A model generated the notes under the pieces. The model made no database searches, was not told where the DNA came from, and worked only from the letters and a program-made list of their open reading frames with translations. A stretch of 63,926 bases of DNA, the filler included, from Octopus bimaculoides (Eukaryota): the NCBI RefSeq assembly GCF_001194135.2. It is 8 parts of 8 records of this genome, joined end to end, with 100 filler letters (N's around TTAATTAATTAA, not from the genome) between each part and the next. Parts side by side here need not be neighbours in the genome. Positions count along the whole stretch, not along the records: positions 5,217 to 36,620 come from NC_068998.1; 7 more parts are not named here. One strand, written 5' to 3'. The first letter of the stretch is position 1. Each line of letters opens with the position of its first letter. Positions 12,278 to 36,761 of the stretch are shown in pieces. A program made the position numbers and the translations under genes.

Positions 12278-13212
12278 CTGCAATGGAGCTAACTTGGTTC
12301 AACATACTTCCTCTATAGTTTTCAAGTCTTTGCTTAGTAGAAACTATATTTTAGAAAGAGGCAAACTGAAACAAGACAAACCGTTACCATCCTCGTCTAT
12401 TTACGGAAACAAGAAGTTACGTTTGTTCTGTTTCTCAGCTTGCCATTTCATGGATTGATTGACTGACTGTTTCCATGATGCCAAAACAAGAAGAATACTT
12501 ATGTTGCTACACTTTCTTACTCACAGAGCGTTGAAGCTGTTGGAGGATTGCTGTTGCTGCTGTTGTTGTTGTTTGTATTTGGCATGTCTTTCGTAATAAT
12601 AATGATTTCTTACAATCTACACAACATCGTACATTTGTAGGAAAGGAATACAGTTGATCGAATTTTATCTGCTGTTTAACTTGTATTTATTTGCTTTTGG
12701 ATAGACGGAAAGGAAAGCCAATGCAAGTTAGCATTTTAAACTGGGAATATAAGCAATTTAAGAAATGGGACATCATGTAGATGATTTACATGCTAGAAAT
12801 AACAGCTAAATCTTCACAAAATTTCACTTTCCCATTTCAAAATGGAGCTTGATGTTGTCCTAGATACAGTAAACCTGGATTAAAGATTACATGTTTATGG
12901 CTGGTACATCTTTGATCATTTATCTTCTGAATCGGGGATTATCTGGAAAGGAGAACTTAACATCCCACTTCTGGGTACAGTCCCACTGCATTCCACCTTG
13001 GGCAAGTTTCTTCTGCTATAGCCTCGGGCTTACCAAAGGCTTGTGAGTGGATTTGGTAAACAGAAACTGAAAGAATTCCATCATGTATATATATATATAT
13101 ATATATATAAATATCATGTATATATATATATATATATATACATATCATGTATATATATATATATATATATATAAATATCATGTATATATATATATATATA
13201 TATCATGTATAC

Positions 13213-18058: not shown

Positions 18059-20676
18059 CAATGAAAAGTGTAAGATATGGATTCAGAGGATTGTGTATCA
18101 CAGTAAGATCACACAAAATTTCATATCTCTTGACATTATGTTTATATATATATATATACACACACATATGCATACATACAGACACAGACACATACCTATA
18201 TATTGTATTTTTTCTGTTTCCCATGATAACTTGGCTTTTATCTTCTGAGATCAATAAAATATTATCTGTCACTTGCTGGAATTCATTTTATTAACTACAT
18301 CCTCGAAGGTAATGTTTCACCATGGCTACAGTTCAATGACTGGAACTAATGAACTAAAAAAATAAATGGTTACACTTTACATGGTCACAGCTCATTTTAA
18401 GAACCCATTATTTTATGGTGGAACAGATTAAAAAGTTCTGTAGAAGACTGAATAAAGGGATTAGTTGATGCTAGGCTGAAGTATCTATTCATGGGCCATT
18501 TGGTAATTAAGTATTATGTCTGTGAATTCTCAGTGTAGCAATACTGGTTTTGGATTCTTTAGCCATCAAACGTTGAGACACTATAAATCTGGTGAAACTG
18601 TGACTCTTGTTGAAGCAATAGCAATTTTAGCATAAAATTGGCGATAAAAATGCAAATGATGAATAATTAATTATTTAAATTACTGAAAATAAAACAAAAA
18701 TATTTTTTGCAACGCAAAGTTTTAAAATACTGGACAATCAATGCGAAATTTAAATTTTGATTTAAAAATACAATAGGTATTAACTCGACTTTTGATTTGT
18801 AATTGCAAATTAAATAAAAAATTTAAATAGAATTGATATTCAATTATGTACATAGAGTTTTTTCTTTGAATACTTCTTTTTTTTATTCTGCTTTATTTCA
18901 AAGTCTATTTATTTATTTTATTTTATTATTATGAGGATTCTCATGTTCTGATATGATTACCATTTGAAAGTCATTTATTCAAATAAGAATCTTTTAAAAC
19001 AAATAAAGAAATCGATTTATTACAGTTGAAATTATCAATTAAGTTTTTATTGTTGTTTGAGTTTAATATTAGGTCTTATATAGCTGAAACGTTGCAGTAG
19101 ATAAACGCTATATTGATACATAACTCTGTTATTATTGTGTAACACAGTTTAAAATAAACAACAAACTGCCTTCTTCTGTCATTAGTTTGCCCCCAATTAG
19201 TTTATTTCCTCACAGAATTAAGGAAATGAATTGGCATAAAATATAAAATGAAGAACTAAATATCTTGTACCATTTAACTTTATATCCTCTCAGTTCTGAG
19301 TCCAAAGTCAGCAGTGGTTTGTTAATTATTCTTCAAGTCAACTCTGGTCAAGTGAACTCACATTTAAAAGCCATCATTATCATTTAATGTCTGTTTTCCA
19401 TGCTCCAGTCTGATCTGGCTGTGTTTCTACAGCAGGATACCCTTCCTAATGCCAACCACTCCGTGAGTGTAGTGGGTGCTTTTTAAGTGCCACTGGCACA
19501 TGGGCCAGAGGAGGCTAGCAATGACCATGATCGGTTGGTATTTTTTATGTGCCACCAGCATGGAAGCCAGTTAAGCATCGGCCATGTTCAGATGGTGCTT
19601 TTTAAGTGCTTCCGGCATGGGGATCACAACTACAATTTCCATTTGAATTTTATGTACTTGACTCAGTAGGTCTCCTCAAGCACAGCATGTCGCCCTATGA
19701 TCCAAGGTACTTTCGAGTGGGCTGGGGCTGGTTATGCAACACTGGTGTAGGTTTCAGCTGTGAACTCACTTTATTTGCGGGTCTTTAACATCCCAGATAT
19801 GATGCAAGGCTGCAGTGCCCTAACAACCCCTAAGGCATTAAGGGATTCGTCAATAGGGGCATACAGTCCCCCATCATGTTTGCCATTGTGTTGAAAGTGC
19901 TTTGTCTGCTTGATCAAGGCTAATTTTTTATTAAACAGCCAAAAATCATAATAGTTTAGGACAGATTCACTCCAACAAATGAATATAACCAATATCTGGT
20001 TAAACTGAAATAAATGGTAGTAAGGTATGGGAGGGGTAGTGAATGTGACTAATATTCATACTTTCATTCTCTCATCTTTATAACGATAATACTAAAACTA
20101 ATAGTAATGATAATAATAATAATAAGAAGAAGAAGAAGAGGAAGAATTGTTTCTAATATAATATAATAATTAGTTATTAACACTAAACATGATTAGCTAA
20201 GAGAAAAGATAATGGCTCACTTAGAGAAAAGATAAAACTGTAGCAAATCACTATAAACTATAACAAACAAAAAAAAAAAAGCTAAAACAAAACAATAACA
20301 GGATTAGAAAAACAGCTCAGCTTTAGATCGTTGTTTAATTTTTTTGTGTGATTGATTATTTAATTAGTTATTTATTTATTGGATGTACTGGTTTTCTTCA
20401 GATTAATCACACTAGTATTTTTGTTGTTCAAAGATTTTGAATTCAGATCCCATCACAGTGGCCAATAAATGGTCGTTCTTTGAGCATCACAAAAGTAAGG
20501 TGCACACATGGCCCTATGGTTAAGCATTTCATTTTGAAGTTGTATGGTTCTAGTTTCAATCTCATTCTTTGATATCTTGAGGAGAAAATAAGTTCTGCTA
20601 TAGTCTTGATTTGACTAATATCCGTCGAATGTAAATAATATACATAATTCCTCATCTCTTAAATATAGAACTGTAG

Positions 20677-20834
20677 TGGCTGTGTTGTGTGGTAAGTAGC
20701 TTGCTTACCAACCACATGGTTCCAAGTTCAGTCCCACTGCGTGGCACCCTGGGCAAGTGTCTTCTACTATAGCCTCGGACCGACCAAAGCCTTGTGAGTG
20801 GATTTGGTAGACGGAAACTGAAAGAAGCCCGTCG

Positions 20835-20881
<47 letters not shown>

Positions 20882-20925: not shown

Positions 20926-21907
20926 NNNNNNNNNNNNNNNNNNNNNNNNNNNNNNNNNNNNNNNNNNNNNNNNNNNNNNNNNNNNNNNNNNNNNNNNNNN
21001 NNNNNNNNNNNNNNNNNNNNNNNNNNNNNNNNNNNNNNNNNNNNNNNNNNNNNNNNNNNNNNNNNNNNNNNNNNNNNNNNNNNNNNNNNNNNNNNNNNNN
21101 NNNNNNNNNNNNNNNNNNNNNNNNNNNNNNNNNNNNNNNNNNNNNNNNNNNNNNNNNNNNNNNNNNNNNNNNNNNNNNNNNNNNNNNNNNNNNNNNNNNN
21201 NNNNNNNNNNNNNNNNNNNNNNNNNNNNNNNNNNNNNNNNNNNNNNNNNNNNNNNNNNNNNNNNNNNNNNNNNNNNNNNNNNNNNNNNNNNNNNNNNNNN
21301 NNNNNNNNNNNNNNNNNNNNNNNNNNNNNNNNNNNNNNNNNNNNNNNNNNNNNNNNNNNNNNNNNNNNNNNNNNNNNNNNNNNNNNNNNNNNNNNNNNNN
21401 NNNNNNNNNNNNNNNNNNNNNNNNNNNNNNNNNNNNNNNNNNNNNNNNNNNNNNNNNNNNNNNNNNNNNNNNNNNNNNNNNNNNNNNNNNNNNNNNNNNN
21501 NNNNNNNNNNNNNNNNNNNNNNNNNNNNNNNNNNNNNNNNNNNNNNNNNNNNNNNNNNNNNNNNNNNNNNNNNNNNNNNNNNNNNNNNNNNNNNNNNNNN
21601 NNNNNNNNNNNNNNNNNNNNNNNNNNNNNNNNNNNNNNNNNNNNNNNNNNNNNNNNNNNNNNNNNNNNNNNNNNNNNNNNNNNNNNNNNNNNNNNNNNNN
21701 NNNNNNNNNNNNNNNNNNNNNNNNNNNNNNNNNNNNNNNNNNNNNNNNNNNNNNNNNNNNNNNNNNNNNNNNNNNNNNNNNNNNNNNNNNNNNNNNNNNN
21801 NNNNNNNNNNNNNNNNNNNNNNNNNNNNNNNNNNNNNNNNNNACTGGGTTTTGACAAGAAACAGCTGTAAGTCATATTATTATTATATATGCAGTAGTGA
21901 TACGATG

Positions 21908-22148
21908 AAGTAGTTGTATGCTGCCAACTTAATGTGACAGTCCCCTGAAGGGAATAATACTACTGTTGGTTAGACCTAGGAAGCTGCACCACTTACTGTC
22001 GGCCTTGACACATTTCCTGTGTCCTTATGTGTCAAGGCTGAAATGTCTCAAAGCCAACAGGAAGCGGTGCAGCTTCCTAGGTCTAACTGACAGTAGTATT
22101 ATTCCCTTCAGGGGACTGTCACATTAAGTTGATAGCATACAACTACTT
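21908..22148. repeat. MITE-like hairpin element
   Basis: aagtagttgtatgct...ttagacctaggaagctgcacc pairs with ggtgcagcttcctaggtctaa...agcatacaactactt; inner stem ccttgacaca/tgtgtcaagg. Confidence 0.85.
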
Positions 22149-22274
22149 GATATTATTATTGTTGGATATACCCAAAACAGCTGTAAGACTTTGTAAGATT
22201 TTTTCTAATAGTAATATTGTATATGACTTGAAATGTTTGCCTTGCCTTAATGTTTGTTGTCCTCTTTAGCAATA

Positions 22275-23153: not shown

Positions 23154-23849
23154 TCAGTCAACACAGAATTGGAATTGCTGTGTAGTTGAGACATTCCCTT
23201 TACAACCATGTGATTCACGATACATTAGCTGTGTATTGACTAATGACTCATAAGTAGAATTCAAGGGATGGAAAGTGTATTGATGTCTGTTGCAATATAG
23301 ATAATTAGATATAAAATACTCATGTTGATGTGTATCTTTAGTTCGTTATTCATATCCTTCTGCAAAGTATATGAATAAAGCATTAAAAGAATATGTGCTT
23401 TACAAGTGAAATTCTTTGAGATATTTGTGTTATGCATTGGGTTTACAAGAGTTCCCTTGTTACTCTTGCCGTCAGAAATGCAGTGAACCAGGGATGCTAT
23501 TGCTTGCAAATTGTAACATATAATCCGCACAATGAAGGCAAATTGGCAGAATCATTAGCATGCCAGTGAAAATGCTTAGTGGCATTTCATCCATCTGTAG
23601 GTTCTGAGTTCAAATCCCTTTCAAGGCAAGGTTGACTTTGCCTTTCATCCTATGATAAAATAAGTCCCAGTTGAGCGCGGTGGGGTGATGTAATTGCCCT
23701 ACACCTCCCTCGAAATCTCTGGACTTGTACCAAAATTTGAAACTAATAAAGTTTGTAATGCAATTAGGCAATGATAAGATTTGGACTCAGAAGGAGATGA
23801 AATAAATTCAAGAAGGCACACGCGCCAACATTCCTATAGTTCCATCACT

Positions 23850-24267
23850 CAGTTCTATATTTAAGAGATGAAGAATTATGTACATTATTTACATTTGATG
23901 GATATTTGTCCTCATCTCGTTTGTTGTTAACACATTTCAGCTGATATACCCTCCAGCCTTCATCAGGTGTCTTGGGGAAATTTCGAACCTGGGTTCTCAT
24001 TCCTAAGATATTTTTCAATGTTGTTATTATTATTATTATTATTATTATTCAGGTCACTGCCTAGAATCGAACTCAGAATCTTGGAGTTAGTAGCTCGCAT
24101 TCTTAACCATAGTGCCATATGAGAAAAACACCTTAGGAATGAGAACCCAGATTCAAAATTTCCCCGAGACAACTGATAAAGAAAGGCTGGAAGGTGTACC
24201 AGCCGAAACACTATGTTAACAACAAACAAGATGAGGACAAATATCTGTTAAATGTAAATAATGTAAA
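23850..24267. mobile_element. Same composite family: minus-strand copy (23850-24121) followed by an inverted partial copy (24131-24267)
   Basis: Shared terminus cagttctatatttaagagatgaag; tRNA-like head at 24051-24120 (-) with B box GTTCGATTC; the CCTTAGGAATGAGAACCC...ATGTAAATAATGTA block is present in both orientations. Confidence 0.8.
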
Positions 24268-24668
24268 TGATGTTCCACCAATCAGTTGCCCTAGGTCTAT
24301 ACCTTTTTATTAACCTAAAAAAACAAAGTTGATCGCCAGGGGATTTGAACTTGCAGCAAAGAGATTCAGAACAAAAACAATGAAGTATTGTATCCAGTCC
24401 CCTAATGACACTGTGCTTTTGGCTAAAAACCATCAGTCATATTTGAAGTTTCATTACCATGGGATTGATAGTATAGTACTAATATGGTTTGATCCAATGA
24501 AATATAGTTTTTCTCATCTATAAAAGCAAATTGGTTTTATGCTTATTTAAGAAATCAATAATACAATGTGTCTATAAAGATGCTTAATCTTGTTTTGAAG
24601 ACAGTTTTAGAGTAATTCCTAAGTTAACATGTGATCTGCAACTGCACTACCAGATTTATCATTATTAT

Positions 24669-24990: not shown

Positions 24991-26228
24991 TCTGGCCCAT
25001 CATTGAGAGGATGTTGGTGTTGCCTTGGTGGAGGGTTGCACTCCCTGAGTGCTCTTATTATTATTGTTGTTGTTGTTAGGGGCCATGCTGGCAGAACTGT
25101 TACCACACTGGGCAAAATGCTTAGCGACATTTCGCCCCTCTTTACATTCTGTCTTCAAATTCAGCCAAGGTCAACTTTGACTTTCATCTTTTAAGGGTCG
25201 ATAGAATAAATACCGGTTGATCATTCACATTGATGCAATCACCATTTACCCCTTCCCTAAAAAACTACTGGCCTTTTGCCCAAATTAGAGACCATTATTA
25301 TTATTATTAGTATTATTATAATAGTTGTTATTTAGAATTCATTCAGGTTTAATAAGCGATGTACTCTAACTCCGTTGTTAACACCATGTAAAGATTGCAG
25401 TTATATCAAGACTATTGTAGCATTTTGACAAAACTGCTAAGCATTTCCCCCCCCCCCCCAATCTATCTTCACAGCAAGACAGTGTTTACACACTCAAAAA
25501 CAAGCTAAATATAAATAGTCATTCAAAAAAAGCTAAAAATAGAAGCTAACTCTGACTAAAATCACACTCTGCAGCCTTTAAAAAAAAACCCAGAGACATC
25601 AGTATGCAGGGTAATGCAGTCCTGGATACGTTATTTCTAAAAGGTGGGCTTGTCATACATTCCATGCAATCAGGGCTGGCTTAGAGCTTAACAACAATAA
25701 ATACAACTGCTTAGTTTACATGTCTTTTGGTATGCTGTATACATAAGCAAGGCAGCATTTTTGTTTTATCTTTTTATAAGCAACATCACACAGCATATTA
25801 CAAAATGTTTATATGGCATCTCTACCTATAACAGAGAACATGTGACTTGTATATAGTGGAGTGCTGCAGGAAGTCTACAGAAAGTAAAAATTACAATAGT
25901 AGAGACAGTTGTTGATCTAACCTCTAGCAGTCTTCACAACAATACTGATCGTGTTTGCATTCATGAAAGAGATTTCTTTCATATGCTGTGAGGTATAATT
26001 TACAGTTTAATTTCAAAGATAAATATTATTACTTTTGCAAAGTAAGGCATTTGGGTGTATAAAATGTAAATTTGCAGCAAACCGAAATAAAGTTCCATTT
26101 CATTTATGTTATATACATGTCTTTGAAAAAAGCATTTTTGTTGCATCTTCTATTTGGCACTCATTCCACCAACTTAGAAAAAAAAGGTAAAATGTGGAAG
26201 GCAGCAAACCTATAACAACAGGGAGTAA

Positions 26229-26516
26229 CATCATCATCATCATCGTTTAACGTCCGCTTTCCATGCTAGCATGGGTTGGACGATTTGACTGAGGACTGGT
26301 GAAACCGGATGGCAACACCAGGCTCCAGTCTGATTTGGCAGAGTTTCTACAGCTGGATGCCCTTCCTAACGCCAACCACTCAGAGTGTAGTGGGTGCTTT
26401 TACGTGTCACCTGCACGAAAACGGCCACGCTGGAAATGGTGTCTTTTATGTGCCACCCGCACAAGCCAGTCCAGGGGCACTGGCAACGATCTCGCTCGAA
26501 AATCCTACGGGAGCCA
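26229..26516 (-). mobile_element. RTE-type 3'UTR / tail repeat
   Basis: catcatcatcgtttaacgtccgctttccatgctagcatgggttggac end. Related copies at ~6415-6460, 13860-14010, 19370-19790 and 36290-36620. Confidence 0.7.
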
Positions 26517-26761
26517 NNNNNNNNNNNNNNNNNNNNNNNNNNNNNNNNNNNNNNNNNNNNNNNNNNNNNNNNNNNNNNNNNNNNNNNNNNNNNNNNNNNN
26601 NNNNNNNNNNNNNNNNNNNNNNNNNNNNNNNNNNNNNNNNNNNNNNNNNNNNNNNNNNNNNNNNNNNNNNNNNNNNNNNNNNNNNNNNNNNNNNNNNNNN
26701 NNNNNNNNNNNNNNNNNNNNNNNNNNNNNNNNNNNNNNNNNNNNNNNNNNNNNNNNNNNNN

Positions 26762-26957
26762 CTCTCTTGCACGCCACAACTGATGCTTCTAATGTTCAGC
26801 TTTTCTCTCAAGATACTTACACTCTGACGGGTATTCACATTGACATTACACATCCAACGGAGCATACTGGCTTCATTCCTTGCGAGCTTACGTATGTCCT
26901 CAGCAGTTACAGCCCATGTTTCACTGCCATGTAGCATGGTTGTTCGTACGCATGCCA
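26762..26957 (-). mobile_element. RTE-clade LINE fragment (post-RT region)
   Basis: ACVRTTMLHGSETWAVTAEDIRKLARNEASMLRWMCNVNVNTRQSVSILREKLNIRSISCGVQE. The matching 3'UTR with (GAT)n tail lies across the gap at 26229-26516. Confidence 0.85.
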
Positions 26958-27306
26958 TAGTTCTATATTTAAGAGACGAGGAATTATGTACATTATTTAC
27001 ATTATTTACATTTGACGGATAGTTGTCCTCATCATGTTTGTTGTTAACACAATGTTTCAGCTGATACACCCTCCAGCCTTCATCAGGTGTCTTGGGGAAA
27101 TTTAGAACCTGGGGTCTCATTCCTAAGGTATCTTTTAGTGTTATTATTATTATTATTATTCAGGTCACTGCCTGGAATCGAAATCAGAGTCTTGGGGTTA
27201 GTAGCCTGTGCTCTTGGCCACTATACCATATGCCTGTGGGCAATTATGGAATGAATTTTAGGGCTTATGAATCTAATATTTTCCTATCTTCTTAAATATA
27301 GAACTG
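26958..27306 (-). mobile_element. Composite non-autonomous element: inverted termini, tRNA-like head, (AAT)n, hammerhead motif
   Basis: Both ends share AGTTCTATATTTAAGA in inverted orientation. Internal A box TGGTATAGTGG, B-box-like ATTTCGATTCC, and CTGATGA...GAAAC core. Related copies at 23850-24267, 50081-50242 and 20617-20673. Confidence 0.8.
27046..27091 (-). ncRNA. Minimal type I hammerhead ribozyme motif (slightly decayed)
   Basis: GACAC-CTGATGA-A-GGCTG-GAGGGTGTAT-CAGCT-GAAAC-ATT-GTGTT. Stem I GACAC/GTGTT present; the differences from the 50081 copy look like CpG-type transitions. Confidence 0.6.
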
Positions 27307-30199
27307 TATAAATATTATTACTTCGTTTCATGTTGCTGCAGACCACACAGCTGGCAAAAGTGAGCAATACTGCGATAGACTGGTGTCCCATCCAGGTGGG
27401 GAATATATATACAATGGAAACCTGGAAGCCAGCCCTTGTGAGTCTATATACTCGGGCAGGAACTTTGGCTAAGAGGGTCCATCCAAATAAAGCAGGAATC
27501 AAAGGAGTCCAGTCCACAGGGAAAAAACGGTTGGAAAACACTGCTATAAATTGATAGCATTGATCAGAGATACTTCATCAGAGCAAATCAAATACTTAGA
27601 AGTTGTCTATAAATGCTTGTACCCTAAATTTTGCTTTAGTAGCTTGTTGTACATTCAGCTATGCCGTCACGGTTGGCTGACTGAACGGGTAGCCATGAAG
27701 TAGTCAGGGCATGACGAATCTACTTCGCTATCCCTCTGGTTGCTTGGTATGGATAAGGTTGATTTAGTTCATGGTCTAATTTGCTTAAACTGAACAATGA
27801 TTTCAAGATAAAAAAAATCTGAGAACGTTTATTCAGCCAGCTCTGTTGCTAGTGTGATGATTGATTGCAATAATTAATGCAAAAGCCCTCATCATATAAA
27901 AGTGAATAGAATTGTTTTGATTATTGAGCTTGTGATCAGTGAGTGTATATAAATATATGAGTAATTGGTGTAAATCTAATAAAGTTCTATTATTGATGGC
28001 ATGAAATATGGAAGCAGCCTCATTAATAGCTTCTGTTACAGTTTCAACAAGAAACCAGCTTTTCAAATTGATATTGTCTTAAGTTAAACTGTGTTACATG
28101 CTTCTACTCACTTCTTATTGTATTATAGATACTGGTCAATGTGATGCCCTGTTTGTTATAAAGCAGATTGATACCATCTCTGTGTCTGACTTGTTTAAAC
28201 ACGAATTGCATTGCCCTGTTTTAGAAACCATTCTTTATATCAGAATTCTGGCAGCTTAAACTATGCACGTAAAACTATATGGCTGCTTGGTCTAAACAGA
28301 ATACATTGTATTCATCATTGTATTCATCATTCATTTAACAGTAGGAATAATAATTACCGTGTCACCTGAGAGTGTTACCTGCTGTAGATGAACAAATGAG
28401 ATACCCTAGATTAGCTAGAAATAACAAACAACTTTCCTTTAAATCACACTCTTATAGCTTAGAAAAAGAAGAAACATAGTGGATAGAGTGTTTCTAGATA
28501 CAATGTATGCAAGAACAAGATTTAAGACAGGATAGTCGCGACTGGATTGCATATTTGCTCATAGATCCACTTTCTCAGAGTTGACTTGGGATGAGCAACT
28601 TAGCGGTTCAGCAAAAGAGATGGATAGAATAAGTACTAAGCTTACAAAGAATAAGTCCTGGGGTCGATTTGCTCAACTGAAGGTGGTGCTCCAGCATGGC
28701 CACAGTCAAATGACTGAAACAAGTAAAAGAGAACTAACAGTAAAATGGAAAACAATGTTTATTTTTGTAGAGTTCCACTTTATTTGTATTTGAAAAGTTT
28801 GCTCCTGCCTTCTTTTTAATAGCAAAGTCTTTGATCAGATCCTCACTATGGCACCATGAACACTTTGAAATTATATTTCTGATCATATAAACCACTTTGA
28901 ATATTATTTTAGCAAGTTTAAAGTGATTTCTTTTGTGCTGTAAACTATTTACCATTTCTGTGGTAACCCCTCCCATGACGCCCAAAGCACAAGCTCATTT
29001 TGCATAATGGTTAATCCAGCACTGTTTATGCTCTGAGTTCATATTCTGCCAAGGTCAATTTTACCTTTCATTCTTTTGGGGAGGAGAAGCAAATCAACAG
29101 AGTAAAATAAATACCAGTTGAGCACTGAGGCCGATGTAGTTGACTTATCCTCTTCACCTGGAATTGTTGGGCTTGTGTCAAAATTTGAAATCAATATTTC
29201 CCTTTCAAATACTAAAAGAAAAATCTAATTAGATAGTAATCACATAAGTTGCTACTAGTTATACACACCTAGCACACCTTCCTAGGTTCACCATTGCCCC
29301 CACCACTATCATAAAACAAAAAAAGAAAAAGAAGAGCATGTGACAGGATTAATTGAAACCTGAAGGTACATACTTGAAACAATTCTGTATCAATTTAACT
29401 CACAATTTTCAATATACAAAATTGTAATATTGCACACTATACGACTTAGTTTAATTATCTTCTGTCATTTGGTTTTATATCCTGATATTTTGAAACATGC
29501 AATATTTATAATTTTTATTACGTTTTTATGAGAGAATATCATCCCCCCCCCTCATAATCTTTTTTATTGACAAGATATAAAAAAGAAAAAAATTTTCAAT
29601 AAATATTCAAAATTACATTTAGTTCAGTTCATCTTTAGTCTTTTAACTTCCTGCATTTGGTGTAAAAATCTTTTATTCATTTATTTCATTCCATAATGAA
29701 TTCATTCTTGGTGGTGGATATTTTTCATTTACTTCTTTTGGATTAAAAGGGTTTTTTCTTTTTTTTTAATCTTATTTTTATAGCAAAGGTATTTCAGAAC
29801 CGTTTTGTATTCTGAGCTTTGTTTGTCTTTCATTGTTCTAGTGTTTCTTTTTTCTATTTAATACCATTGTTATTATTTTGTTTTGTCTTTTCTTTAGCAA
29901 ACTTTCTCTCCTTTTCATAGTTTGCTTGTTGTTTATTGTCCATTTTTGTTTTGTCTTCTTTACATTGTTATGAAAAACTATTGTATTTTGAATTTTTCTC
30001 TATATTCATTCAATCTTTCATAAAAAAGTAATATAATGCATGGAATTGCTAACAATATGACAGTGTATTGCAGTACATTGATATGGTATTAAGTGATATC
30101 ATGTATTGAATTATTTGACTACACCACTAGTTAGAGATTTTCCTGATGGTATACTAAACGAAGGAACAATATATATATATATATATGTTTAAAGCTTAT

Positions 30200-30448: not shown

Positions 30449-32068
30449 TTTTGAGATTGCTAATCCTTTTAACCCCCACATGTGTGAGAACACCCATACT
30501 AAAATGCTCAAATTCAAAGTTGAATGTCTATGAAAATGTCGTTATAACATGAATATTATGAGGTTTCAGGTAATCAGTTATGCATTACGTCATACAGTAT
30601 ATGACATAAGTGTAAAAGAGATAAGAAATAGCAAAACTGGAGCAATGCCATAGATATATATATGTATCATTAACAGAATTTTGAATGATATATTATGATC
30701 AATATATTATGTGCCTGAAAAGTTTTTGCACAGCATCTGTTGATATTCCCACTGTGGAAAAATACTGAATGTAAAATGAAAAGTTATATTTCTGAAAAGA
30801 TTTTGGCTTATCACATTTGATGTTATTTCTCTTCTCTACACAGCTCAGCTAAAACTTTCAACAAAGCATTGCTGTTATATCAAGGGCTGTGCTCTTACTA
30901 CACACACAAGCAGCCAAGAATGCTTCCATAGAAATGCCACTTGGTTGTTTAGCATAAAATCTCTCACAGACATTCCTCTTCTGGCATCAGCGTTGGATTA
31001 ACCATTAAGCAAAATGACAAAATGAGCATGTGCTTAGGGCATCAATGGAAAGAGGGGGCACCACAGAAATGGTAAATGGTTTAAGGCACAAAAGAAATCA
31101 CTTTAAACATTTCTAGAATGATATTCACGGTGGTTTATATGATCAGAAATATAATTCCAAAGTGTTCTTGGTGTCATAGTGAAGATCGATCTGGGAAAAA
31201 ACTTTGCAATTAAAAACAGTAGGGAAAAACTTTTCAAATATAAAGAAAGTGGATGTCTACAAAAATAAACACTATTTTCCATCTTACTGTTAGTTTTATT
31301 CCAATTTGAAAAATAAAGATTTATCTTATGGTTTATTATAGCTTATCTTTTGAATTACATACATGTGGGGCACCAAAATCTTTTAAGTACTAAGATCCTC
31401 TGTGGGTTTTAATCCAGTCTTTTTTGGCATACATATGTACTGTCACCTTTCTTTGCCTTTCCTCTTTCAACTACAATGTGTTCTGCTCCTTGGAGTTGCT
31501 GGCTTTGTACCATTTAGGCACTCTTGACTTACCCATCTCATCCCTACCGTGAAGACTCCACATGAACCACAGATTCCCAGTCCTTCTTCTTCTGAATGTT
31601 AACTCTCTGTAATTACCTCCTGTTGATGTCAACTTTGAACAGCTTAAACAAAGCATAAACAGCATCAGTCTTACTTCTCTTGGAAGGCCTGTGAAGTTCA
31701 AGGACATTGCTCCTTCCTCCTGACCTATCTTATACAAATTAAGACCAGCCTTGGCCAAACAGAAATATCTTCATGGCATTACAGTCAACCACTCCATTGG
31801 TTTGTATATCAATACTCTTTTACTCTCTTTTTTTTTTACTCTTTTACTTGTTTCAGTCATTTGAATGTGGCCATGCTGGAGCACTGCCCTTAGTCAAGCA
31901 AATCGACCCCAGGACTTATTCTTTGTAAGCATAGTACTTATTCTATCAGTCTCCTTTGCCGAACCGCTAAGCTACAGAATGTAAACACACCAGCATAGGT
32001 TGTCAAGCGATGTTGGGGGGACAAACACAGACACACAAACATATGCACACACACACATATATACATAT

Positions 32069-32852
32069 AGGAAAATAAAATAATAATAATAATAATAAGG
32101 CAGAATGCTAAAATGAAAGCATATTTTAATATAGATGCGTATAAGAAGGATTAAAAAGGATTTCTAACCAGCTTTCATTGCATGGCAAATTTTCAAGATG
32201 AGGGAAAATGAAAATAATGCTTTTTACAAAAAAACTAAAATATATATATAAAAAAAAAAAGAATATATATAAAAAAAATAAATATACAAATACATTATTT
32301 TGTCCTTGAGTTTTTAAAGTTCAATAGTAATCCATGTAGATAATTATTAGAAAGATTAGGATGCATGTAATAAAGAATGGTGTTTGTTTAAAAAAGGCTA
32401 AGAGTTTATGTTAAACAGGAAATGTGGTGCCAAAACAGGAAGTGTGTATAAGGGAAGACAATTCCGTGGGTTTTATACTCTAACTCACAGAATTGTCTTC
32501 CCTTACACGCACTTCCTGTTTTGACACCACATTTCCTGTTTAACACATAAATTCTCAGCCTTTTTCAAACACAACACCATTCTTAATTATGTCTCCTAAT
32601 CTTTCTAACAATTATTTACACGGATTACCATTGAACTTTAAAAACCCAAAGACAATATGATTTACAGGTATATTTATTTTTTTAATAATTTTTATTTTTT
32701 GTAAAAAACATTTTCATTTTCCCTCTTCTTGAAAATTTGCCATGCAATGAAAGCCAGTTAAAAATCCTTTTTAATCCTCCTTATACACATCTATATTAAA
32801 ATATGCTTTCAGTTTAGCATTCTGCCATATTATTATTATTATTTATTTTCCT
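32069..32852. repeat. ~780-bp imperfect palindrome (foldback / MITE-like)
   Basis: Arms pair along their whole length, e.g. acaggaaatgtggtg / caccacatttcctgt and gctttcattgcatggcaaattttcaag / cttgaaaatttgccatgcaatgaaagc; 9-nt loop at 32473-32481. Confidence 0.9.
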
Positions 32853-34913
32853 ATTATTTCTCCACGTGTGGTTAACACAACCCCACCATTTACTGATTTA
32901 TAAATATATATATATACGACGGGCTTCTTTCAGTTTCCGACTACCAAATCCACTCACAAAGCTTTGGTCAGTCCAAGGCTATAGTAGAAGACACTTGCCC
33001 AAAGTGCCACACAGTCAGACTGAACCCAGAACCATGTGGTTCGTAACCAAGCTACTTACCACACAGCCACTCCTATGCCTAATGTATGCTTCTCTATTTA
33101 GCATGAGATTTGAAGAAAATTTTGCTACTATTTCTAGAAGAATGAATGATTACCTAGAGGTTCCTTTGCTTAGACTTATTAATGCTATTAACCTATTGAT
33201 GTCATTGTTTTCTTTGGTTATTTATCTCCGTGAATTGTCTTGCATTACATTGTCTTTGAGCAAACAGTGTAAAAATAGTGTTATGGGAGGTGTTAAAGAG
33301 TGATAAACTTAAAGTAAGATGTGACTGCACTACAAATTTTATTCCTGGTTTAGCTATTTTCTTTTCCCTTCTCTTACTCTTCATCCTTGTGATTTACTAA
33401 ATCTGAAAAGAAATGAGTTCTGCCAGATTGAGCTGCTCATCATGATATGTTACAAAGTACAGAGAAACAAGGATCTGAAATTTTCAGAAGTTGTTGCTGT
33501 TTTGGTTCAAGGTCAGCGCTCATTGAACAAACCTGGAAAGGTGTTAGTCAATAACCATCAACCCCAGTAATCGACAGCTATTTGTATGTAATTCAAAAGA
33601 TAAGGGATGAAAAGCTAAGTTGACCTCAGCAGGATTTGAAATGTAAGGAGCTGGAAGAATTACTTGCTGCAAGGCATTTTTTTTACCAATACTCTTACCA
33701 CTACTACTACAATTATTTTTCTCTTATTTCTACATTTTTCTCATCTTCTGTAATCTTGATTTTTTTTCATCTTTTTCCATGAGCTACTTTTGTTACCTTT
33801 TCCATATGCTTTTATTTTCACTTTCATTTCTTAAGCTTCTTCATACGTTTTTTCTACAATTTTTTTCAAATCCTGTCTTTTTATTCTTCAAATTTTTGCT
33901 TTTCATTTTCCTTTTTTTACTGTATTTTTCATCATTTTTTTTTTATCCTTTTCAAAATATTCTTTTCATTTGCATTCTGTCTCTTCTTCTGCTTTCTTTT
34001 TTTTTTTTTATTTCTTCCTCTGTTTTCTCTTATTATTTTGTCTATCTTCTTTCTTCTTGTTTCGTTTGTCTATCTACATAAAGACACTTCATCATGTGTA
34101 ATTGAAAGGATAGTTTAAATGGCTTGAGAGTCTTTATTATGCTAAGAACATGAATCAGTGAGGATAGGCTTTACCTAAGGTCCAACAATTGTTAAAATTA
34201 CAACATGTAAAGAATAATGACAATTTTGATACATAAATAAAAAAAGGAAAACAAGGTCAAACAGTTTCCTTTCAGATAGCATGTTCCATTATTTTGAAGT
34301 TGTTGTATGTTCAGAGCTGAAAAGACTCTGATTGGATTCGTTCAGTTAAGAAAACTTCCAACGAAGAAGGCCAAGAGGACAGAGGCTTTTAGAAAAAGAA
34401 ATGTTGCTGTTTAAGGAAGTATGGGTGAAATAGCAGTGAGCTTCCAGGTTTTAGAACGTTTAAGGAGAATATCATCTGATATCTTCATTTTATGCTATTC
34501 TTTTTAATCTTTCACTGTTATCAGTTATAATAATTGTCATTAACATCACCATTGCCACTTTTATCATTATTCTCATTACATAAACAGACACACTCGCTAA
34601 CACACATACACACACACACACACACGCTCTCACACACACACACACACACATGCACACAAGCACATTTGGAAATATGACTGTGTTCCAGTCAAAAATTTTA
34701 TTGGAATTATTTCATATTTTCGTTTGAGTGCCTTGCTGTGTATTTGGAACAAAAAATAAGTTACTAAACCAACCATCATTTTTAGACTTTCTTTCAGCTG
34801 ATGTGTGCAATTGCATTTTCTGATGTAGTTAAATGTATACATAGGTATATATTTATGTATATGTTATTTTCATTTTCATGTAATTTAGATGTGAATATAT
34901 TCGCTACACCCTG

Positions 34914-36324: not shown

Positions 36325-36761
36325 GTTGTCATCATCGTCATCATCCTCATTTAATGTCCGTTTTCCATGCTGGCATATGTTACCTGAACTAGAAGACCAG
36401 AGAGCTGCATCAGGTACCAGGCTGATTTGACTTGGTTTCTATTCTTTAGCTTGATGCCCTTCCTACATTAACCAGTTTACTAAGTGTATTCCATGCTTTT
36501 TACATATTACCTGCTAAGACCCCTTTTGGTCATGACTGACCATGGGATTGCACCTAGAAAGTTACCCTCCAAGGCACAAGTCCGGGCAAGGTTTTTTATG
36601 GAAGACCAGCAGTCGCCTATNNNNNNNNNNNNNNNNNNNNNNNNNNNNNNNNNNNNNNNNNNNNTTAATTAATTAANNNNNNNNNNNNNNNNNNNNNNNN
36701 NNNNNNNNNNNNNNNNNNNNTATATATATATATATATATACGTATGTATGTATGCATGTAC

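What the first reader, a model, noticed from the sequence alone, without database searches (positions are those of the whole stretch)
26958..27306. Chimeric ~350-bp element: inverted termini + tRNA-like Pol III head + hammerhead ribozyme
Seen: on the minus strand the order is terminus CAGTTCTATATTTAAGA, spacer, tRNA-like head (A box TGGTATAGTGG, B-box-like ATTTCGATTCC; GTTCGATTC in the 24051-24120 copy), (AAT)n, then GACAC-CTGATGA-A-GGCTG..CAGCY-GAAAC-RTT-GTGTT, then the inverted terminus, with CTG|TA at three ends (20673, 27306, 50242). Established: CUGANGA/GAAA with stems I-III is the hammerhead core; Penelope-like elements carry minimal type I hammerheads with palindromic stem III thought to act as dimers; an extra A after A9 occurs in the CChMVd(+) hammerhead; Schistosoma SM-alpha is a tRNA-derived SINE with a hammerhead. 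Inference: this is a cephalopod retrozyme/SINE-MITE hybrid that may be Pol III transcribed, self-cleaving, and mobilised by PLE RT or by a Tc1/mariner transposase (CAGT ends, TA flanks). I do not know of a description of this combination in octopus.
Basis: partly seen in the sequence, partly recalled or inferred. Interest (0 to 1): 0.85.

Follow-up and report, generated by a model that had tools for sequence, protein, structure and literature searches.

The report
Octopus SINE-like element with Penelope-type hammerhead
This 349-bp stretch is an old, mutated copy of a short non-coding jumping element that joins a Pol III-promoter-like head to a Penelope-type minimal hammerhead ribozyme module; its inverted ends look like a by-product of how Penelope-like elements insert, not the ends of a DNA transposon.

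Summary
The hammerhead-like motif is far beyond chance: one hit in the piece, none in 300 simulated sequences.

The motif matches the published "minimal hammerhead" of Penelope-like elements (PLEs). It has a short helix I, an extra base between A9 and G10.1, and no helix III. An 18-copy consensus from octopus, Logan contigs and an unidentified eukaryote is a perfect minimal hammerhead. Most copies are decayed, and this one has lost the ACGU helix-III palindrome.

A head with A- and B-box-like motifs precedes the module in 10 of 10 copies long enough to show it. tRNA detectors never recognise that head.

The "inverted termini" match the PLE insertion signature:
- an inverted, 5'-truncated second copy abuts the direct copy;
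- a 31-nt tail is optional;
- copies are 5'-truncated but share a 3' end;
- 7-11 bp target duplications enclose whole inverted-plus-direct composites.

The MITE/Tc1-mariner reading is rejected. Copy 1 also lies, with a truncated LINE, between two perfect 16-nt direct repeats. Covariation is not significant. Pol III transcription, PLE dependence and self-cleavage are all inferred.

Verdict: a new variant of a known kind, of moderate interest.

The parts
27281..27306 (-). 5' 'terminus' (p1-26). It is an inverted copy of the last ~26 nt of the element's own 3' tail: 17 nt perfect, then one indel.
   Evidence: Matches the reverse complement of 26959-26974 and of 20648-20673. The inner extension is not significant.
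27250..27280 (-). Filler of unknown origin (p27-57). No other copy has it.
   Evidence: No other copy in the window or in the fetched loci. Family similarity starts at about p58.
27161..27249 (-). Head: a short leader, the A-box-like TGGTATAGTGG (27218-27228), the B-box-like GATTTCGATTCC (27174-27185), and CAGGCAGTGACCTG.
   Evidence: Homologous heads in copy 2, L051 (x2), L059 (x2) and L068, and heads of the same architecture in L058 (x2) and L067. Not detected as tRNA.
27141..27160 (-). Internal (AAT)n tract between head and body.
   Evidence: Also present in copy 2, L056, L048 and L063, and short or absent in the ENA subfamilies.
27092..27140 (-). Linker between (AAT)n and the hammerhead. 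It holds the ATG (27118-27120) of a 50-aa ORF that runs through the module.
27046..27091 (-). Minimal type-I hammerhead motif. Helix I is GACAC/GUGUU. The core is CUGAUGA, followed by an extra A. Helix II is GGCUGG/UCAGCU, then GAAA. A15.1-C-A-U16.1-U17 gives a predicted cleavage site after 27051.
26990..27045 (-). Rest of the conserved module (AACAACAAAC..GATGAGGACAA..TCCG..(AATGTAAAT)n).
   Evidence: About 80% identical to the 129-nt unit of the ENA subfamilies.
26958..26989 (-). Optional ~31-nt 3' 'tail' (ACATAATTCCTCGTCTCTTAAATATAGAACTA).
   Evidence: Present in copies 1, 2 and 4, both L046 copies and P0001. Absent in copy 3, L051dir, L048 and L063, which end at p315-320. L059dir aligns to ~p328.
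23850..24122 (-). Copy 2: head, (AAT)n, hammerhead module (23929-23971, with a 3-nt deletion after GAAA) and tail. It has no 5' inverted terminus of its own.
24124..24273 (+). Copy 3: an inverted, 5'-truncated copy (p172-317) lying head-to-head with copy 2. Its core is mutated (CTGATAA plus a 4-nt insertion), helix II is GGCTGG/CCAGCC, and it ends at the short 3' end.
24272..24282 (-). Left copy of the candidate target-site duplication (ATTGGTGGAAC) of the copy 3 + copy 2 composite.
   Evidence: 9 of 11 identical to 23839-23849; empirical chance about 1%.
23839..23849 (-). Right copy of the candidate target-site duplication (AGTGATGGAAC).
20613..20673 (+). Copy 4: a 5'-truncated solo copy (p279-348) that keeps the same 3' end.
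27308..27323 (-). Left copy of a perfect 16-nt direct repeat, AAGTAATAATATTTAT, one base from the element's 5' end.
26019..26034 (-). Right copy of the same 16-nt repeat. The pair encloses copy 1, a 5'-truncated LINE (26236-26957) and 195 nt of unique DNA.

Best explanation
The feature is one old copy of a SINE-like, non-autonomous retroelement family. Each element has two parts.

- **Head.** About 90 nt carrying Pol III type-2 promoter-like A and B boxes.
- **3' module.** About 135 nt: a Penelope-like-element (PLE) type unit that contains a minimal type-I hammerhead and ends in an optional ~31-nt tail.

**Proposed life cycle**
1. The head drives transcription. This step is inferred.
2. The RT/GIY-YIG endonuclease of an autonomous PLE recognises the 3' module, in the way a LINE-derived tail serves an ordinary SINE. 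This step is inferred.
3. The PLE enzyme primes reverse transcription on both cleaved target strands and from two neighbouring start sites. That behaviour is published for a lizard PLE.

The resulting anatomy is seen here directly:
- a direct copy is abutted at its 5' side by an inverted, 5'-truncated copy;
- 3' ends are either long (with tail) or short (without tail);
- partial tandems occur;
- short target duplications of varied sequence enclose the whole composite.

On this reading the 'inverted termini' of the finding are the shortest possible inverted partner, consisting of the tail alone.

The hammerhead would cleave after GUU only when two units pair through the ACGU palindrome, that is, as a dimer. 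This copy has ACAU and is probably inactive. The ribozyme's role in the element's cycle is unknown.

Copy 1 itself seems to have reached its present site as part of a larger retro-insertion that also carries a truncated LINE.
For: **1. The hammerhead motif**
- It is unique in the piece and absent from 300 simulations.
- It matches every non-descriptor hallmark listed for PLE minimal hammerheads (PMC4209133), at least in the family consensus: a base between A9 and 10.1, G10.1-C11.1, a palindromic 15.2-16.2, helix I of 4-5 bp, and a long helix II. In this copy 10.1-11.1 is a G-U wobble and 15.2-16.2 is not palindromic.

**2. Family consensus**
- A profile of the ORF running through the module found 138 predicted peptides.
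- DNA for 13 of them was fetched.
- The 18-copy alignment has the consensus ACAC-CTGANGA-A-GGCTGG-AGGGTATA-TCAGCC-GAAA-CG-TT-GTG.
- N7, the one free core position, varies as T, A or C between lineages.
- 75.7% of cells pair, against 16-45% when partners are slid.
- One C-G to G-C swap occurs in helix II (L059).

**3. Head plus module as a unit**
- This order is seen in W copies 1 and 2, L051 x2, L059 x2, L058 x2, L067 and L068.

**4. Inverted partner abutting the direct copy**
- W copy 3/copy 2, W copy 1 (tail only), L046, L051, L059, L057, L058, L067 and L068.
- Partial 129-nt tandems occur in L057 and L067.
- This is the published PLE arrangement (PMC8557442).

**5. Optional 31-nt tail and two classes of 3' end**
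-.
- This matches the PLE-specific 'tail' explained by two RT start sites, and cleavage and extension of both strands (PMC11167929).

**6. Target duplications around whole composites**
- L058 CCAAAGAG; L067 TTAAAAA(C/T)TG; L057 TACATTT.
- W copy 3 + copy 2: 9 of 11, chance about 1%.

**7. 5'-truncated solo copy**
- Copy 4 keeps the common 3' end.

**8. PLEs in octopus**
- PLEs, including recently active families, are reported in Octopus vulgaris (PMC13282606).
Against: - No PLE reverse transcriptase is in the window, and no autonomous PLE sharing the module was found. The only RT near a related copy (L057) is a LINE.
- Covariation is not significant: score 0.209 against a shuffle mean of 0.194, with 116 of 500 shuffles as high. 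The commonest double change (U-A versus C-G) could be produced by CpG decay on both strands.
- Only 4 of 18 copies pass the whole descriptor.
- Rfam hammerhead models give no hit, even on intact copies.
- The head is not recognised as tRNA by any tool.
- Depletion of T4 runs on the sense strand is not significant.
- Copy 1 has no target duplication of its own. It sits inside a 16-nt direct repeat together with a LINE fragment, so a LINE enzyme may have placed this particular copy.
- PLE hammerheads show low activity in vitro and were not needed for insertion in vitro.
Confidence: 0.65

Rival explanations
1. It is a miniature inverted-repeat DNA transposon (MITE), moved by a Tc1/mariner transposase. 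That enzyme would recognise the CAGT... terminal inverted repeats and duplicate a TA target.
For: - A 17-nt perfect inverted repeat begins with CAGT.
- TA adjoins the long end at 27306 and at 20673.
- Tc1/mariner elements are active in octopus (PMC13282606).
Against: - Copy 2 has no 5' terminus, and copy 4 is only the last 61 nt, yet both keep the same 3' end.
- The inverted part is 26 nt here, 150 nt in copy 3, 108 nt in L046, and 230-330 nt in L051, L058 and L067.
- Ends at 26958 (ACT|ATG) and 23850 (CTG|AG) lack TA.
- Duplications around composites are 7-11 bp of varied sequence.
- The TA at 27307-27308 belongs to a 16-nt repeat plus one base.
Confidence: 0.04
2. It is an ordinary tRNA-derived SINE mobilised by a LINE. 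Its conserved central domain merely resembles a hammerhead. The inverted pairs would come from LINE twin priming or later rearrangement.
For: - The head-body-tail layout, an A-rich sense strand and short tandem (AATGTAAAT)n near the 3' end.
- Copy 1 is fused flush to a 5'-truncated LINE. Both lie within a 16-nt direct repeat typical of LINE-type insertion.
- Conserved SINE bodies of unknown origin are common in molluscs (PMC4758252 and PMC5786205).
Against: - In twin priming the inverted segment comes from sequence 5' of the direct segment. Here both outer ends are 3' ends of the element.
- Partial tandems and an optional 30-40-nt tail are PLE signatures, not LINE ones.
- The element has no poly(A) or terminal simple repeat.
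- The consensus reproduces the whole hammerhead core, with only N7 varying.
- The window's LINE 3' end is unrelated to the element's tail.
Confidence: 0.17
3. It is a chance nesting of independent repeats: a head-only SINE with an (AAT)n tail, into which a separate hammerhead-bearing short PLE fragment inserted, since PLEs favour microsatellites.
For: - PLEs show an insertion bias for microsatellites.
- The module also occurs without a head: copy 3, L046, and the L057 tandem.
Against: - The same head, linker and module order and the same junctions recur in 10 copies, from the window, Logan contigs and three subfamilies of an unrelated genome. Several of these have no (AAT)n tract.
- No head-only copy was seen in the 31-kb piece.
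- Head-less copies are explained as 5'-truncated or inverted partners.
Confidence: 0.05
4. The conserved part is a small protein-coding gene or exon (MRTQVRNFPKTPDEGWRVYQLK.CVNNK.DEDKYPSNVNNVHNSSSLKYRT), and the RNA motif is incidental.
For: - The ORF is open in copy 1, copy 2 and P0001.
- It is annotated as a protein in UniProt (A0A0L8FV75).
- A module-derived peptide lies inside RefSeq XP_052825882.1.
Against: - Frames are broken in copy 3 and many other copies.
- No Pfam family and no long homologue appeared among the 138 hits.
- Conservation tracks the ribozyme core, with CpG-decay substitutions changing amino acids freely (YRPKR to YQLKH).
- The sequence is multicopy, truncated and inverted, as expected of a repeat.
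Confidence: 0.02

Closest known systems
Minimal hammerheads (min-HHR) of Penelope-like elements (Cervera & de la Pena 2014, PMC4209133)
   Same: - Type-I topology.
- Helix I of 3-5 bp.
- A conserved unpaired base between A9 and G10.1.
- G10.1-C11.1 in the consensus.
- Helix III reduced to a palindrome (ACGU) that can only pair between two molecules.
- Thousands of mostly solo, decayed genomic copies.
- Pairs on opposite strands 100-700 bp apart.
   Different: - Here the motif sits in a ~135-nt module joined to a head with Pol III boxes, not in the pseudo-LTR of an RT-encoding PLE.
- No autonomous partner carrying it has been identified.
- This family and octopus were not found mentioned in the papers searched.
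Schistosoma Sm-alpha, a Pol III-type SINE-like repeat with a hammerhead (from my own knowledge; cited in PMC4209133 and PMC7229834)
   Same: A short non-autonomous repeat that combines A/B-box promoter motifs with a type-I hammerhead downstream.
   Different: - Sm-alpha carries a canonical hammerhead with loop-loop contacts and a small helix III.
- The octopus family has the minimal PLE-type motif.
- The PLE-like insertion signatures shown here (inverted partner, optional tail, composite target duplications) are not something I know to be described for Sm-alpha.
Animal non-LTR retrozymes (PMC7229834; bioRxiv 10.64898/2026.07.22.740005)
   Same: - Short non-coding repeats carrying type-I hammerheads.
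- Proposed to be non-autonomous derivatives of PLE pseudo-LTRs.
- Solo monomers are common.
- The ENA subfamily forms 129-nt partial tandems.
   Different: - Retrozymes are defined by tandem arrays of 170-400 nt units and circular RNA.
- The octopus copies are single units with a head.
- The unit is shorter (129-140 nt).
- Circular RNA was not tested.
Short non-autonomous Penelope elements and the generic PLE insertion architecture (PMC8557442, PMC11167929, PMC6685494)
   Same: - 5' truncation.
- Partial tandems.
- An inverted 5'-truncated copy at the 5' side, giving flanking inverted repeats.
- An optional 30-40 bp tail.
- Short, hard-to-see target duplications.
   Different: - No sequence link to an RT-encoding PLE was shown here.
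- The Pol III-like head is not a described part of PLE derivatives in the papers read.
Bacterial and phage hammerheads with the same helix II (loci L007-L045)
   Same: CUGAUGA, then one extra base, GGCUGG, a loop beginning AGG/AUGG, CCAGCC, then GAAAC.
   Different: - They have a full helix III hairpin and a GUC site.
- They lie in Clostridia, Paenibacillus and phage DNA.
- The resemblance was partly forced by the search pattern and may be convergent.

Membership tests
Hammerhead ribozyme, minimal PLE type | Catalytic core C3-U4-G5-A6-N7-G8-A9 ... G12-A13-A14 in the right order | tested here: met
   - CTGATGA at 27080-27086 and GAAA at 27055-27058.
- Both conserved in the 18-copy consensus, with only N7 varying.
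- 11 of 18 copies keep CUGANGA.
Hammerhead ribozyme, minimal PLE type | Helices I and II flush with the core; G10.1-C11.1 | tested here: met
   - Helix I is 5 bp (GACAC/GUGUU, one G-U).
- Helix II is 6 bp.
- 10.1-11.1 is G-U in this copy and G-C in copy 3 and the consensus.
- The minimum-free-energy fold forms both helices.
Hammerhead ribozyme, minimal PLE type | Unpaired base between A9 and G10.1 | tested here: met
   An A is present in 17 of the 18 aligned copies (L051inv, whose core is decayed, has none). It is T or C in the copy behind P0001, as inferred from the peptide DDGW.
Hammerhead ribozyme, minimal PLE type | A15.1-U16.1, H17, and a palindromic 15.2-16.2 allowing a dimeric helix III | tested here: inconclusive
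   - A...U-U is present.
- This copy has C-A (ACAU), which is not palindromic.
- The consensus, and 8 of the 18 copies by the sequence test GAAACGT, have ACGU; the pair count gives C15.2-G16.2 in 9 of the 16 copies without a gap there.
Hammerhead ribozyme, minimal PLE type | Compensatory covariation in the helices | tested here: inconclusive
   - The covariation score is 0.209 against a shuffle mean of 0.194, with 116 of 500 shuffles as high.
- U-A/C-G alternate at one helix-II pair, which CpG decay could explain.
- One C-G to G-C swap was seen.
Hammerhead ribozyme, minimal PLE type | Match to a curated covariance model | tested here: not met
   No Rfam hammerhead hit at the gathering score or at E<=10. 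The intact ENA copy in L058 gives none either, so the models evidently do not cover helix-III-less variants.
Hammerhead ribozyme, minimal PLE type | Self-cleavage | not testable with these tools
   Needs in vitro transcription of monomer and dimer.
PLE-type (Penelope-like) insertion or non-autonomous derivative | 5' truncation with a common 3' end | tested here: met
   Copies 2, 3 and 4, and copies in the Logan and ENA loci.
PLE-type (Penelope-like) insertion or non-autonomous derivative | Inverted 5'-truncated copy abutting the 5' side; partial tandems | tested here: met
   - Inverted partner in 9 insertions.
- Tandems only in the ENA loci L057 and L067, not in the octopus window.
PLE-type (Penelope-like) insertion or non-autonomous derivative | Optional 30-40 bp tail (two alternative 3' ends) | tested here: met
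   - Ends at p315-320 or at p348 in the octopus-type copies.
- Ends at q308-322 or q355-357 in the ENA copies.
- In W copy 3/copy 2 and in L058 the short end adjoins the target duplication directly.
PLE-type (Penelope-like) insertion or non-autonomous derivative | Sequence shared with the pseudo-LTR or 3' end of an RT/GIY-YIG-encoding PLE of the same genome | not testable with these tools
   No octopus genome or repeat library was searchable. The window holds no PLE ORF. The L057 RT is a LINE.
tRNA-derived SINE | Internal Pol III A and B boxes at tRNA-like spacing | tested here: met
   - TGGTATAGTGG and GATTTCGATTCC start 43 nt apart.
- GAGTTCGATTCT in copy 2.
- TGGCGTAACGG ... GGTTCGATTCTC in L058.
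tRNA-derived SINE | Recognisable similarity to a tRNA (cloverleaf or sequence) | tested here: not met
   - ARAGORN finds none, even at 80% thresholds on L058.
- The Rfam tRNA model is silent at E<=10 on five stretches.
tRNA-derived SINE | 3' tail shared with a partner LINE, ending in poly(A) or a simple repeat | tested here: not met
   - The element ends in ...TCTTAAATATAGAACTG.
- It has no similarity to the LINE 3' ends in the window.
- The (AAT)n tract is internal.
Non-LTR retrozyme | Tandem array of 170-400 nt units, each with a type-I hammerhead; circular RNA | tested here: not met
   Single units in octopus. Only 2-3 partial 129-nt units in the ENA loci. Circular RNA is not testable here.
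MITE (Tc1/mariner-type) | Both terminal inverted repeats in all full copies, uniform length, TA target duplication | tested here: not met
   see the rival explanation.

The most novel reading that the evidence does not exclude
This may be a conserved family of Pol III-driven SINEs that parasitise Penelope-like elements rather than LINEs, shared by octopus and at least one genome with no other detectable repeat similarity to it. The 129-140-nt hammerhead-containing module would serve as the unit recognised by the PLE reverse transcriptase/endonuclease. That would make it the first clear SINE-PLE partnership. It would also offer a compact natural substrate for asking what the PLE hammerhead is for.
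Probability: 0.4. Interest if true: 0.7.

Novelty: new variant of a known kind. Interest (0 to 1): 0.5.

Why it matters
SINEs are taught as parasites of LINEs. A short element with a Pol III-type head that instead carries a PLE-type hammerhead module would extend that paradigm to the third class of retroelements, particularly because it inserts with the PLE signature of inverted partner, optional tail and composite target duplications.

It would also give a 130-nt natural substrate for two open questions:
- What does the PLE enzyme recognise in its RNA?
- Does the minimal hammerhead have any role in the cycle?

Practically, the result shows that 'terminal inverted repeats' on short cephalopod repeats can be insertion by-products. 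Such repeats may be misfiled as MITEs, or left as 'unclassified SINEs'; 893 such families with recently active insertions are listed for O. vulgaris. The element's open frame also leaks into protein annotations.

If the PLE link fails, what remains is an ordinary decayed SINE with a conserved body.

Tried and rejected
- **Rfam.** Searched at the gathering score and at E<=10 on the element, copies 2/3, L051, L059 and L058. No hammerhead or tRNA was found. The only hits were sub-threshold miRNA-precursor matches caused by the long hairpin of inverted copies.
- **ARAGORN.** Nothing found.
- **Metagenome scan.** The exact-pattern scan of JGI metagenomes gave six chance hits and no octopus DNA.
- **Genome and viral scans.** These found only bacterial and phage hammerheads.
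- **Protein searches.** The search with the adjacent LINE fragment found nothing.
- **Contig look-ups.**
  - P0001 is not on record.
  - P0021 lies in a 132-kb gene, so no DNA was returned.
- **Literature string searches.** Searches for the element's sequences and for the run and assembly accessions returned nothing.
- **Long TIRs.** The idea that the 5' 72 nt is a long diverged inverted repeat was rejected, because the inner part is no better than shuffles.
- **Pol III terminators.** Depletion of T4 runs on the sense strand (1 real TTTT against 21 AAAA) is within what the A-rich composition predicts.
- **Covariation.** Not significant.
- **Fold energies.** Those of the 46-nt motif are unremarkable, with z between -1.2 and -1.7.
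- **RT near a related copy.** The RT in L057 is a LINE, not a PLE.
- **Known SINE domains.** The Ceph-domain fragment quoted in PMC5786205 is a different sequence, so there is no sign that the module is the Ceph domain. Nin-DC could not be compared, because the papers read quote no sequence for it.
- **Source organisms.** The source of ENA assembly ERZ21867824 and of runs SRR118693xx could not be identified. Apart from this family and microsatellites, those loci share no repeats with the window.
Full report
**Observation**

I read the element on the minus strand and mapped its features. Here p is the position in the 349-nt element.

| Part | Window coordinates | Element positions |
|---|---|---|
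| CAGTTCTATATTTAAGA (5' terminus) | 27306-27290 | p1-17 |
| Unique filler | 27280-27250 | p27-57 |
| Head: A-box-like TGGTATAGTGG (27228-27218), B-box-like GATTTCGATTCC (27185-27174) | 27249-27161 | p58-146 |
| (AAT)n | 27160-27141 | p147-166 |
| Linker | 27140-27092 | p167-215 |
| Hammerhead-like motif | 27091-27046 | p216-261 |
| Conserved stretch, then TCTTAAATATAGAACT(A) | to 26958 | to p349 |

The hammerhead-like motif reads GACAC-CTGATGA-A-GGCTGG-agggtgta-TCAGCT-GAAA-CA-TT-GTGTT.

ARAGORN finds no tRNA in the piece. Rfam finds nothing at the gathering score over the piece, and nothing at E<=10 over 26700-27500.

A relaxed minimal-hammerhead descriptor of my own required four things:
- CUGANGA, with 0 or 1 extra base;
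- helix II of at least 4 bp, flush with GAAA;
- A, then 0-4 nt, then U-H;
- helix I of at least 4 bp.

It finds exactly this one site in the 31.4-kb piece. It finds none in 300 second-order Markov simulations, both strands.

**Copies in the window**

Self-BLAST, reading and alignment give four copies.

- **Copy 1.** 26958-27306, minus strand.
- **Copy 2.** 23850-24122, minus strand, 85% identical. It has the head, (AAT)n, the module and the same 3' end, but none of copy 1's first 57 nt.
- **Copy 3.** 24124-24273, plus strand. It covers p172-317, lies head-to-head against copy 2, and stops about 31 nt short of the usual 3' end.
- **Copy 4.** 20613-20673, plus strand. It is only the last ~61 nt and has the usual 3' end.

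Variable 5' ends with a shared 3' end point to reverse transcription from the 3' end. They do not fit cut-and-paste transposition.

Copy 1's 5' terminus is an inverted copy of its own last 17 nt, or 26 nt with one indel. The similarity does not extend inward: the inner part scores 14 against a shuffle mean of 14.2.

**What kind of hammerhead**

Cervera & de la Pena 2014 (PMC4209133) describe 'min-HHRs' in the pseudo-LTRs of Penelope-like elements (PLEs), and thousands more scattered in metazoan genomes. Their features are:
- helix I of 4-5 bp;
- a long helix II;
- a conserved unpaired base between A9 and 10.1;
- G10.1-C11.1;
- no helix III, only a palindromic 15.2-16.2, so the motif can work only as a dimer;
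- weak cleavage in vitro;
- pairs of motifs 100-700 bp apart on opposite strands.

The octopus motif has all of these except two. In this copy the palindrome reads ACAU, not ACGU, and 10.1-11.1 is G-U. Both differences are single CpG-type transitions from the family consensus described below.

**Getting more copies**

No octopus DNA was present in the metagenome, genome or viral collections.

A 50-aa frame runs through the module and is open in copies 1 and 2. It matched one UniProt entry from Octopus bimaculoides, A0A0L8FV75. This places the window in or near that species.

A profile of the three peptides was searched against 1.84 billion representative proteins and returned 138 hits. They fall into three groups:
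- an octopus-like group (MRTQVRN..PDEGWRVYQ.K.C.N.K.DED.YPSNVNNV...);
- a large group (..QTPEEGRRTYRPKRCGNNNKDEDNSPKTLNDKNHQASSQKFRQ), sometimes in 43-aa tandem repeats;
- a smaller third group (..PEEG.SV.R.KHCDKHGDKDEDNSPKNVNNVHNTSSQKYR..), to which L068 belongs.

These are translations of repeat copies, not a protein family. They come from Logan contigs of runs SRR118693xx and from long contigs of ENA assembly ERZ21867824. One hit is part of O. bimaculoides RefSeq XP_052825882.1.

I fetched DNA for thirteen of them.

**Family consensus**

Eighteen module copies were aligned: 3 from the window, 8 from Logan and 7 from ENA. The majority consensus is ACAC-CTGANGA-A-GGCTGG-AGGGTATA-TCAGCC-GAAA-CG-TT-GTG. 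That is a complete minimal hammerhead with the ACGU palindrome.

N7, the one core position free to vary in hammerheads, is T, A or C in different lineages. The octopus YQLKH reading (CAG CTG AAA CAT) is the CpG-decayed form of YRPKR (CGG CCG AAA CGT).

On the named structure, 75.7% of cells form standard pairs, against 16-45% when partners are slid by 1-3 columns. Column shuffles give 74.8%, and the covariation score is not significant (0.209 against 0.194).

Helix II alternates U-A (octopus type) with C-G (ENA type). CpG decay on both strands could produce that change without any selection. One C-G to G-C swap in L059 cannot be explained that way, but it is a single case.

Among the 18 copies:
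- 11 keep CUGANGA;
- 8 keep ACGU;
- 4 pass the whole descriptor, including copy 1.

The structural support is therefore a pairing-competent, core-perfect consensus shared between genomes that share no other detectable repeats. It is not statistical covariation.

Rfam also fails to see the intact ENA copy. Its silence reflects missing coverage of helix-III-less variants.

**Head and module are one unit**

The same head precedes the module in:
- copies 1 and 2;
- both copies in L051;
- both copies in L059;
- both copies in L058;
- L067;
- L068.

That is ten copies, and every copy long enough to tell. The L068 head aligns with the octopus head (CCCGAAGACTGTGAGTTTAATACCTGG..GGCAGTGGAG against CCCCAAGACTCTGATTTCGATTCCAGGCAGTGACC). 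The L058 head has clean boxes (TGGCGTAACGG ... GGTTCGATTCTC).

No tRNA model recognises any of these heads. 'tRNA-derived' is therefore unproven, and 'Pol III-box head' is the safe description.

Sense-strand T4 runs are rare, but not more so than the A-rich composition predicts.

**The inverted termini**

In nine insertions a direct copy is abutted on its 5' side by an inverted, 5'-truncated copy.

| Insertion | Inverted partner |
|---|---|
| Window copy 3 / copy 2 | 150 nt |
| L046 | 108 nt |
| L051 | 230 nt |
| L059 | about 87 nt |
| L057 | joined inside the helix-II hairpin, followed by 2.5 tandem 129-nt units |
| L058 | 329 nt |
| L067 | 311 nt, followed by three tandem units |
| L068 | 147 nt |
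| Window copy 1 | 26 nt |

Both outer ends of each composite are therefore 3' ends of the element. That automatically gives 'terminal inverted repeats'.

This is the arrangement described for PLEs: 5' truncation, partial tandems, an inverted 5'-truncated copy at the 5' side, and an optional 30-40-bp tail (PMC8557442). A purified Anolis PLE protein cleaves and extends both target strands. It starts reverse transcription at two neighbouring internal sites, and this explains the tail (PMC11167929).

The family shows the tail.
- Copies end either at p315-320 (copy 3, L051dir, L048, L063) or at p348 (copies 1, 2 and 4, both L046 copies, P0001).
- L059dir aligns to about p328, which falls between the two classes.
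- In the ENA copies, inverted partners end at q308-322 and direct copies at q355-357.

**Target duplications**

Whole composites are flanked by short direct repeats of varied sequence:
- CCAAAGAG in L058;
- TTAAAAA(C/T)TG in L067;
- TACATTT in L057;
- in the window, ATTGGTGGAAC (24272-24282) and AGTGATGGAAC (23839-23849) around copy 3 plus copy 2.

The window pair is 9 of 11 identical, with an empirical chance of about 1%. Each composite is thus one insertion event, and the duplications are not TA.

**How copy 1 got where it is**

Copy 1 has no target duplication of its own. Its 3' end is fused flush to a 5'-truncated LINE: ORF2 C-terminal region, then 3' UTR, then a (GAT)n tail, at 26236-26957.

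A perfect 16-nt repeat, AAGTAATAATATTTAT, lies one base upstream of the element (27308-27323) and again at 26019-26034. These are the only two matches in the window even when 2 mismatches are allowed.

The pair encloses copy 1, the LINE fragment and 195 nt of unique DNA. The simplest reading is a single larger retro-insertion, either a chimeric or a read-through transcript copied by a LINE-type enzyme, in which copy 1 was a passenger. I could not resolve this further.

Two consequences follow:
- The TA before CAGT is not a mariner footprint.
- Copy 1's inverted tail was probably already present in the transcribed source locus.

**Comparison with known systems**

The ribozyme is a member of the PLE minimal-hammerhead class, and the insertion anatomy is PLE-like.

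The element as a whole works like a SINE whose partner is a PLE rather than a LINE. It fails the SINE tests of tRNA similarity and of a LINE-type tail. It also fails the retrozyme test of tandem arrays in octopus.

The nearest precedent for 'Pol III boxes plus hammerhead' is Schistosoma Sm-alpha. That element carries a canonical hammerhead, not a minimal one.

Short non-autonomous Penelope elements are known (PMC6685494). Vertebrate retrozymes have recently been argued to derive from PLE pseudo-LTRs (bioRxiv 10.64898/2026.07.22.740005).

No paper in the searchable library mentions hammerheads in octopus repeats. For O. vulgaris, 893 SINE families with recently active insertions are listed as unclassified, alongside active Penelope families.

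**What is shown and what is inferred**

Shown:
- the motifs;
- their non-random nature;
- family membership;
- the core-perfect consensus;
- linkage of head and module;
- the inverted-partner, tail and truncation signatures;
- composite target duplications.

Inferred:
- Pol III transcription;
- use of a PLE enzyme, since no PLE sharing the module was available to compare;
- dimeric self-cleavage after GUU;
- any role of the ribozyme.

**Verdict**

This is a real feature. It is best filed as a new variant, with a Pol III-box head, of the known PLE-type hammerhead-bearing non-autonomous elements. Interest is moderate.

Noticed in passing
window 27308-27323 and 26019-26034 (minus strand): A perfect 16-nt direct repeat, AAGTAATAATATTTAT, encloses copy 1, a 5'-truncated LINE and 195 nt of unique DNA. 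It looks like the target duplication of one larger chimeric or read-through retro-insertion.
   Followed up: partly
window 26236-26957 (minus), N gap 26516-26761; also 19373-19571, 36340-36465, 13924-13977: LINE fragment: ORF2 C-terminal region (MACVRTTMLHGSETWAVTAEDIRKLARNEASMLRWMC...), then a 3' UTR ending in a (GAT)n tail. Three further 3'-end fragments of the same LINE family lie in the piece.
   Followed up: partly
loci L007-L045 (GTDB genomes and IMG/VR contigs): 39 bacterial and phage loci (Clostridia, Paenibacillus, Oscillospiraceae, phage contigs) carry what look like genuine hammerheads, judged by eye only. Their form is CUGAUGA-(U/G)-GGCUGG-loop(AGGGAUA etc.)-CCAGCC-GAAAC plus a helix III hairpin and GUC. 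They share the extra base and helix II with the animal minimal motif.
   Followed up: partly
P0001 (UniProt A0A0L8FV75_OCTBM) and P0021 (RefSeq XP_052825882.1, 'dystrobrevin beta isoform X1', O. bimaculoides): The open frame through the hammerhead module is annotated as a protein. A module-derived peptide (GEGWRVYQPKCCVNNKQDEDKYPSK) also sits in a predicted dystrobrevin isoform. This is either exonisation of the repeat or an annotation artefact.
   Followed up: no
window 23937-24206: The head-to-head copies 3 and 2 form a ~270-nt hairpin. It scores against several plant/animal miRNA-precursor models in Rfam, well below gathering scores (MIR7533, 78 bits against 230). This is an artefact of the long inverted repeat, though such hairpins could feed small-RNA pathways.
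   Followed up: no
window 20674-20850 and 32904-33065 (inverted, 91%); also 12969-13112: Another SINE family begins right after copy 4. Its head has GGTTCCAAGTTCAGTCCC and a CCTGGGCAAGTGT stretch reminiscent of CORE-SINEs.
   Followed up: no
window 24310-24400 (minus): A tRNA-like 3' part (GCAAGTTCAAATCCCCTGGCGATCAAC) is followed by TTTGTTTTTTT, a Pol III terminator-like run. It lies just upstream of the copy 3 / copy 2 composite and is not called by ARAGORN.
   Followed up: no
window 32077-32252 / 32673-32848; 21886-22016 / 22040-22170; 8220-8391 / 8669-8840; 28599-28762 / 31808-31971 / 9806-9946: Several long inverted-repeat pairs (131-176 nt arms, 82-91% complementary). They could be foldback or MITE-like elements, or oppositely oriented SINE copies. 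They were not examined.
   Followed up: no
L057 10100-10200: The junction between the inverted partner and the direct copy falls inside the helix-II hairpin of the hammerhead (..TTTTGGCTGATGTGTCCTCCGGCCGAAAT..). This suggests snap-back or template switching at that hairpin.
   Followed up: no
L057, L058, L067, L068 (ENA ERZ21867824, contigs of 267-525 kb): An assembly filed among metagenomes holds long AT-rich eukaryotic contigs full of LINEs, microsatellites and three subfamilies of this element. The host organism could not be identified.
   Followed up: partly
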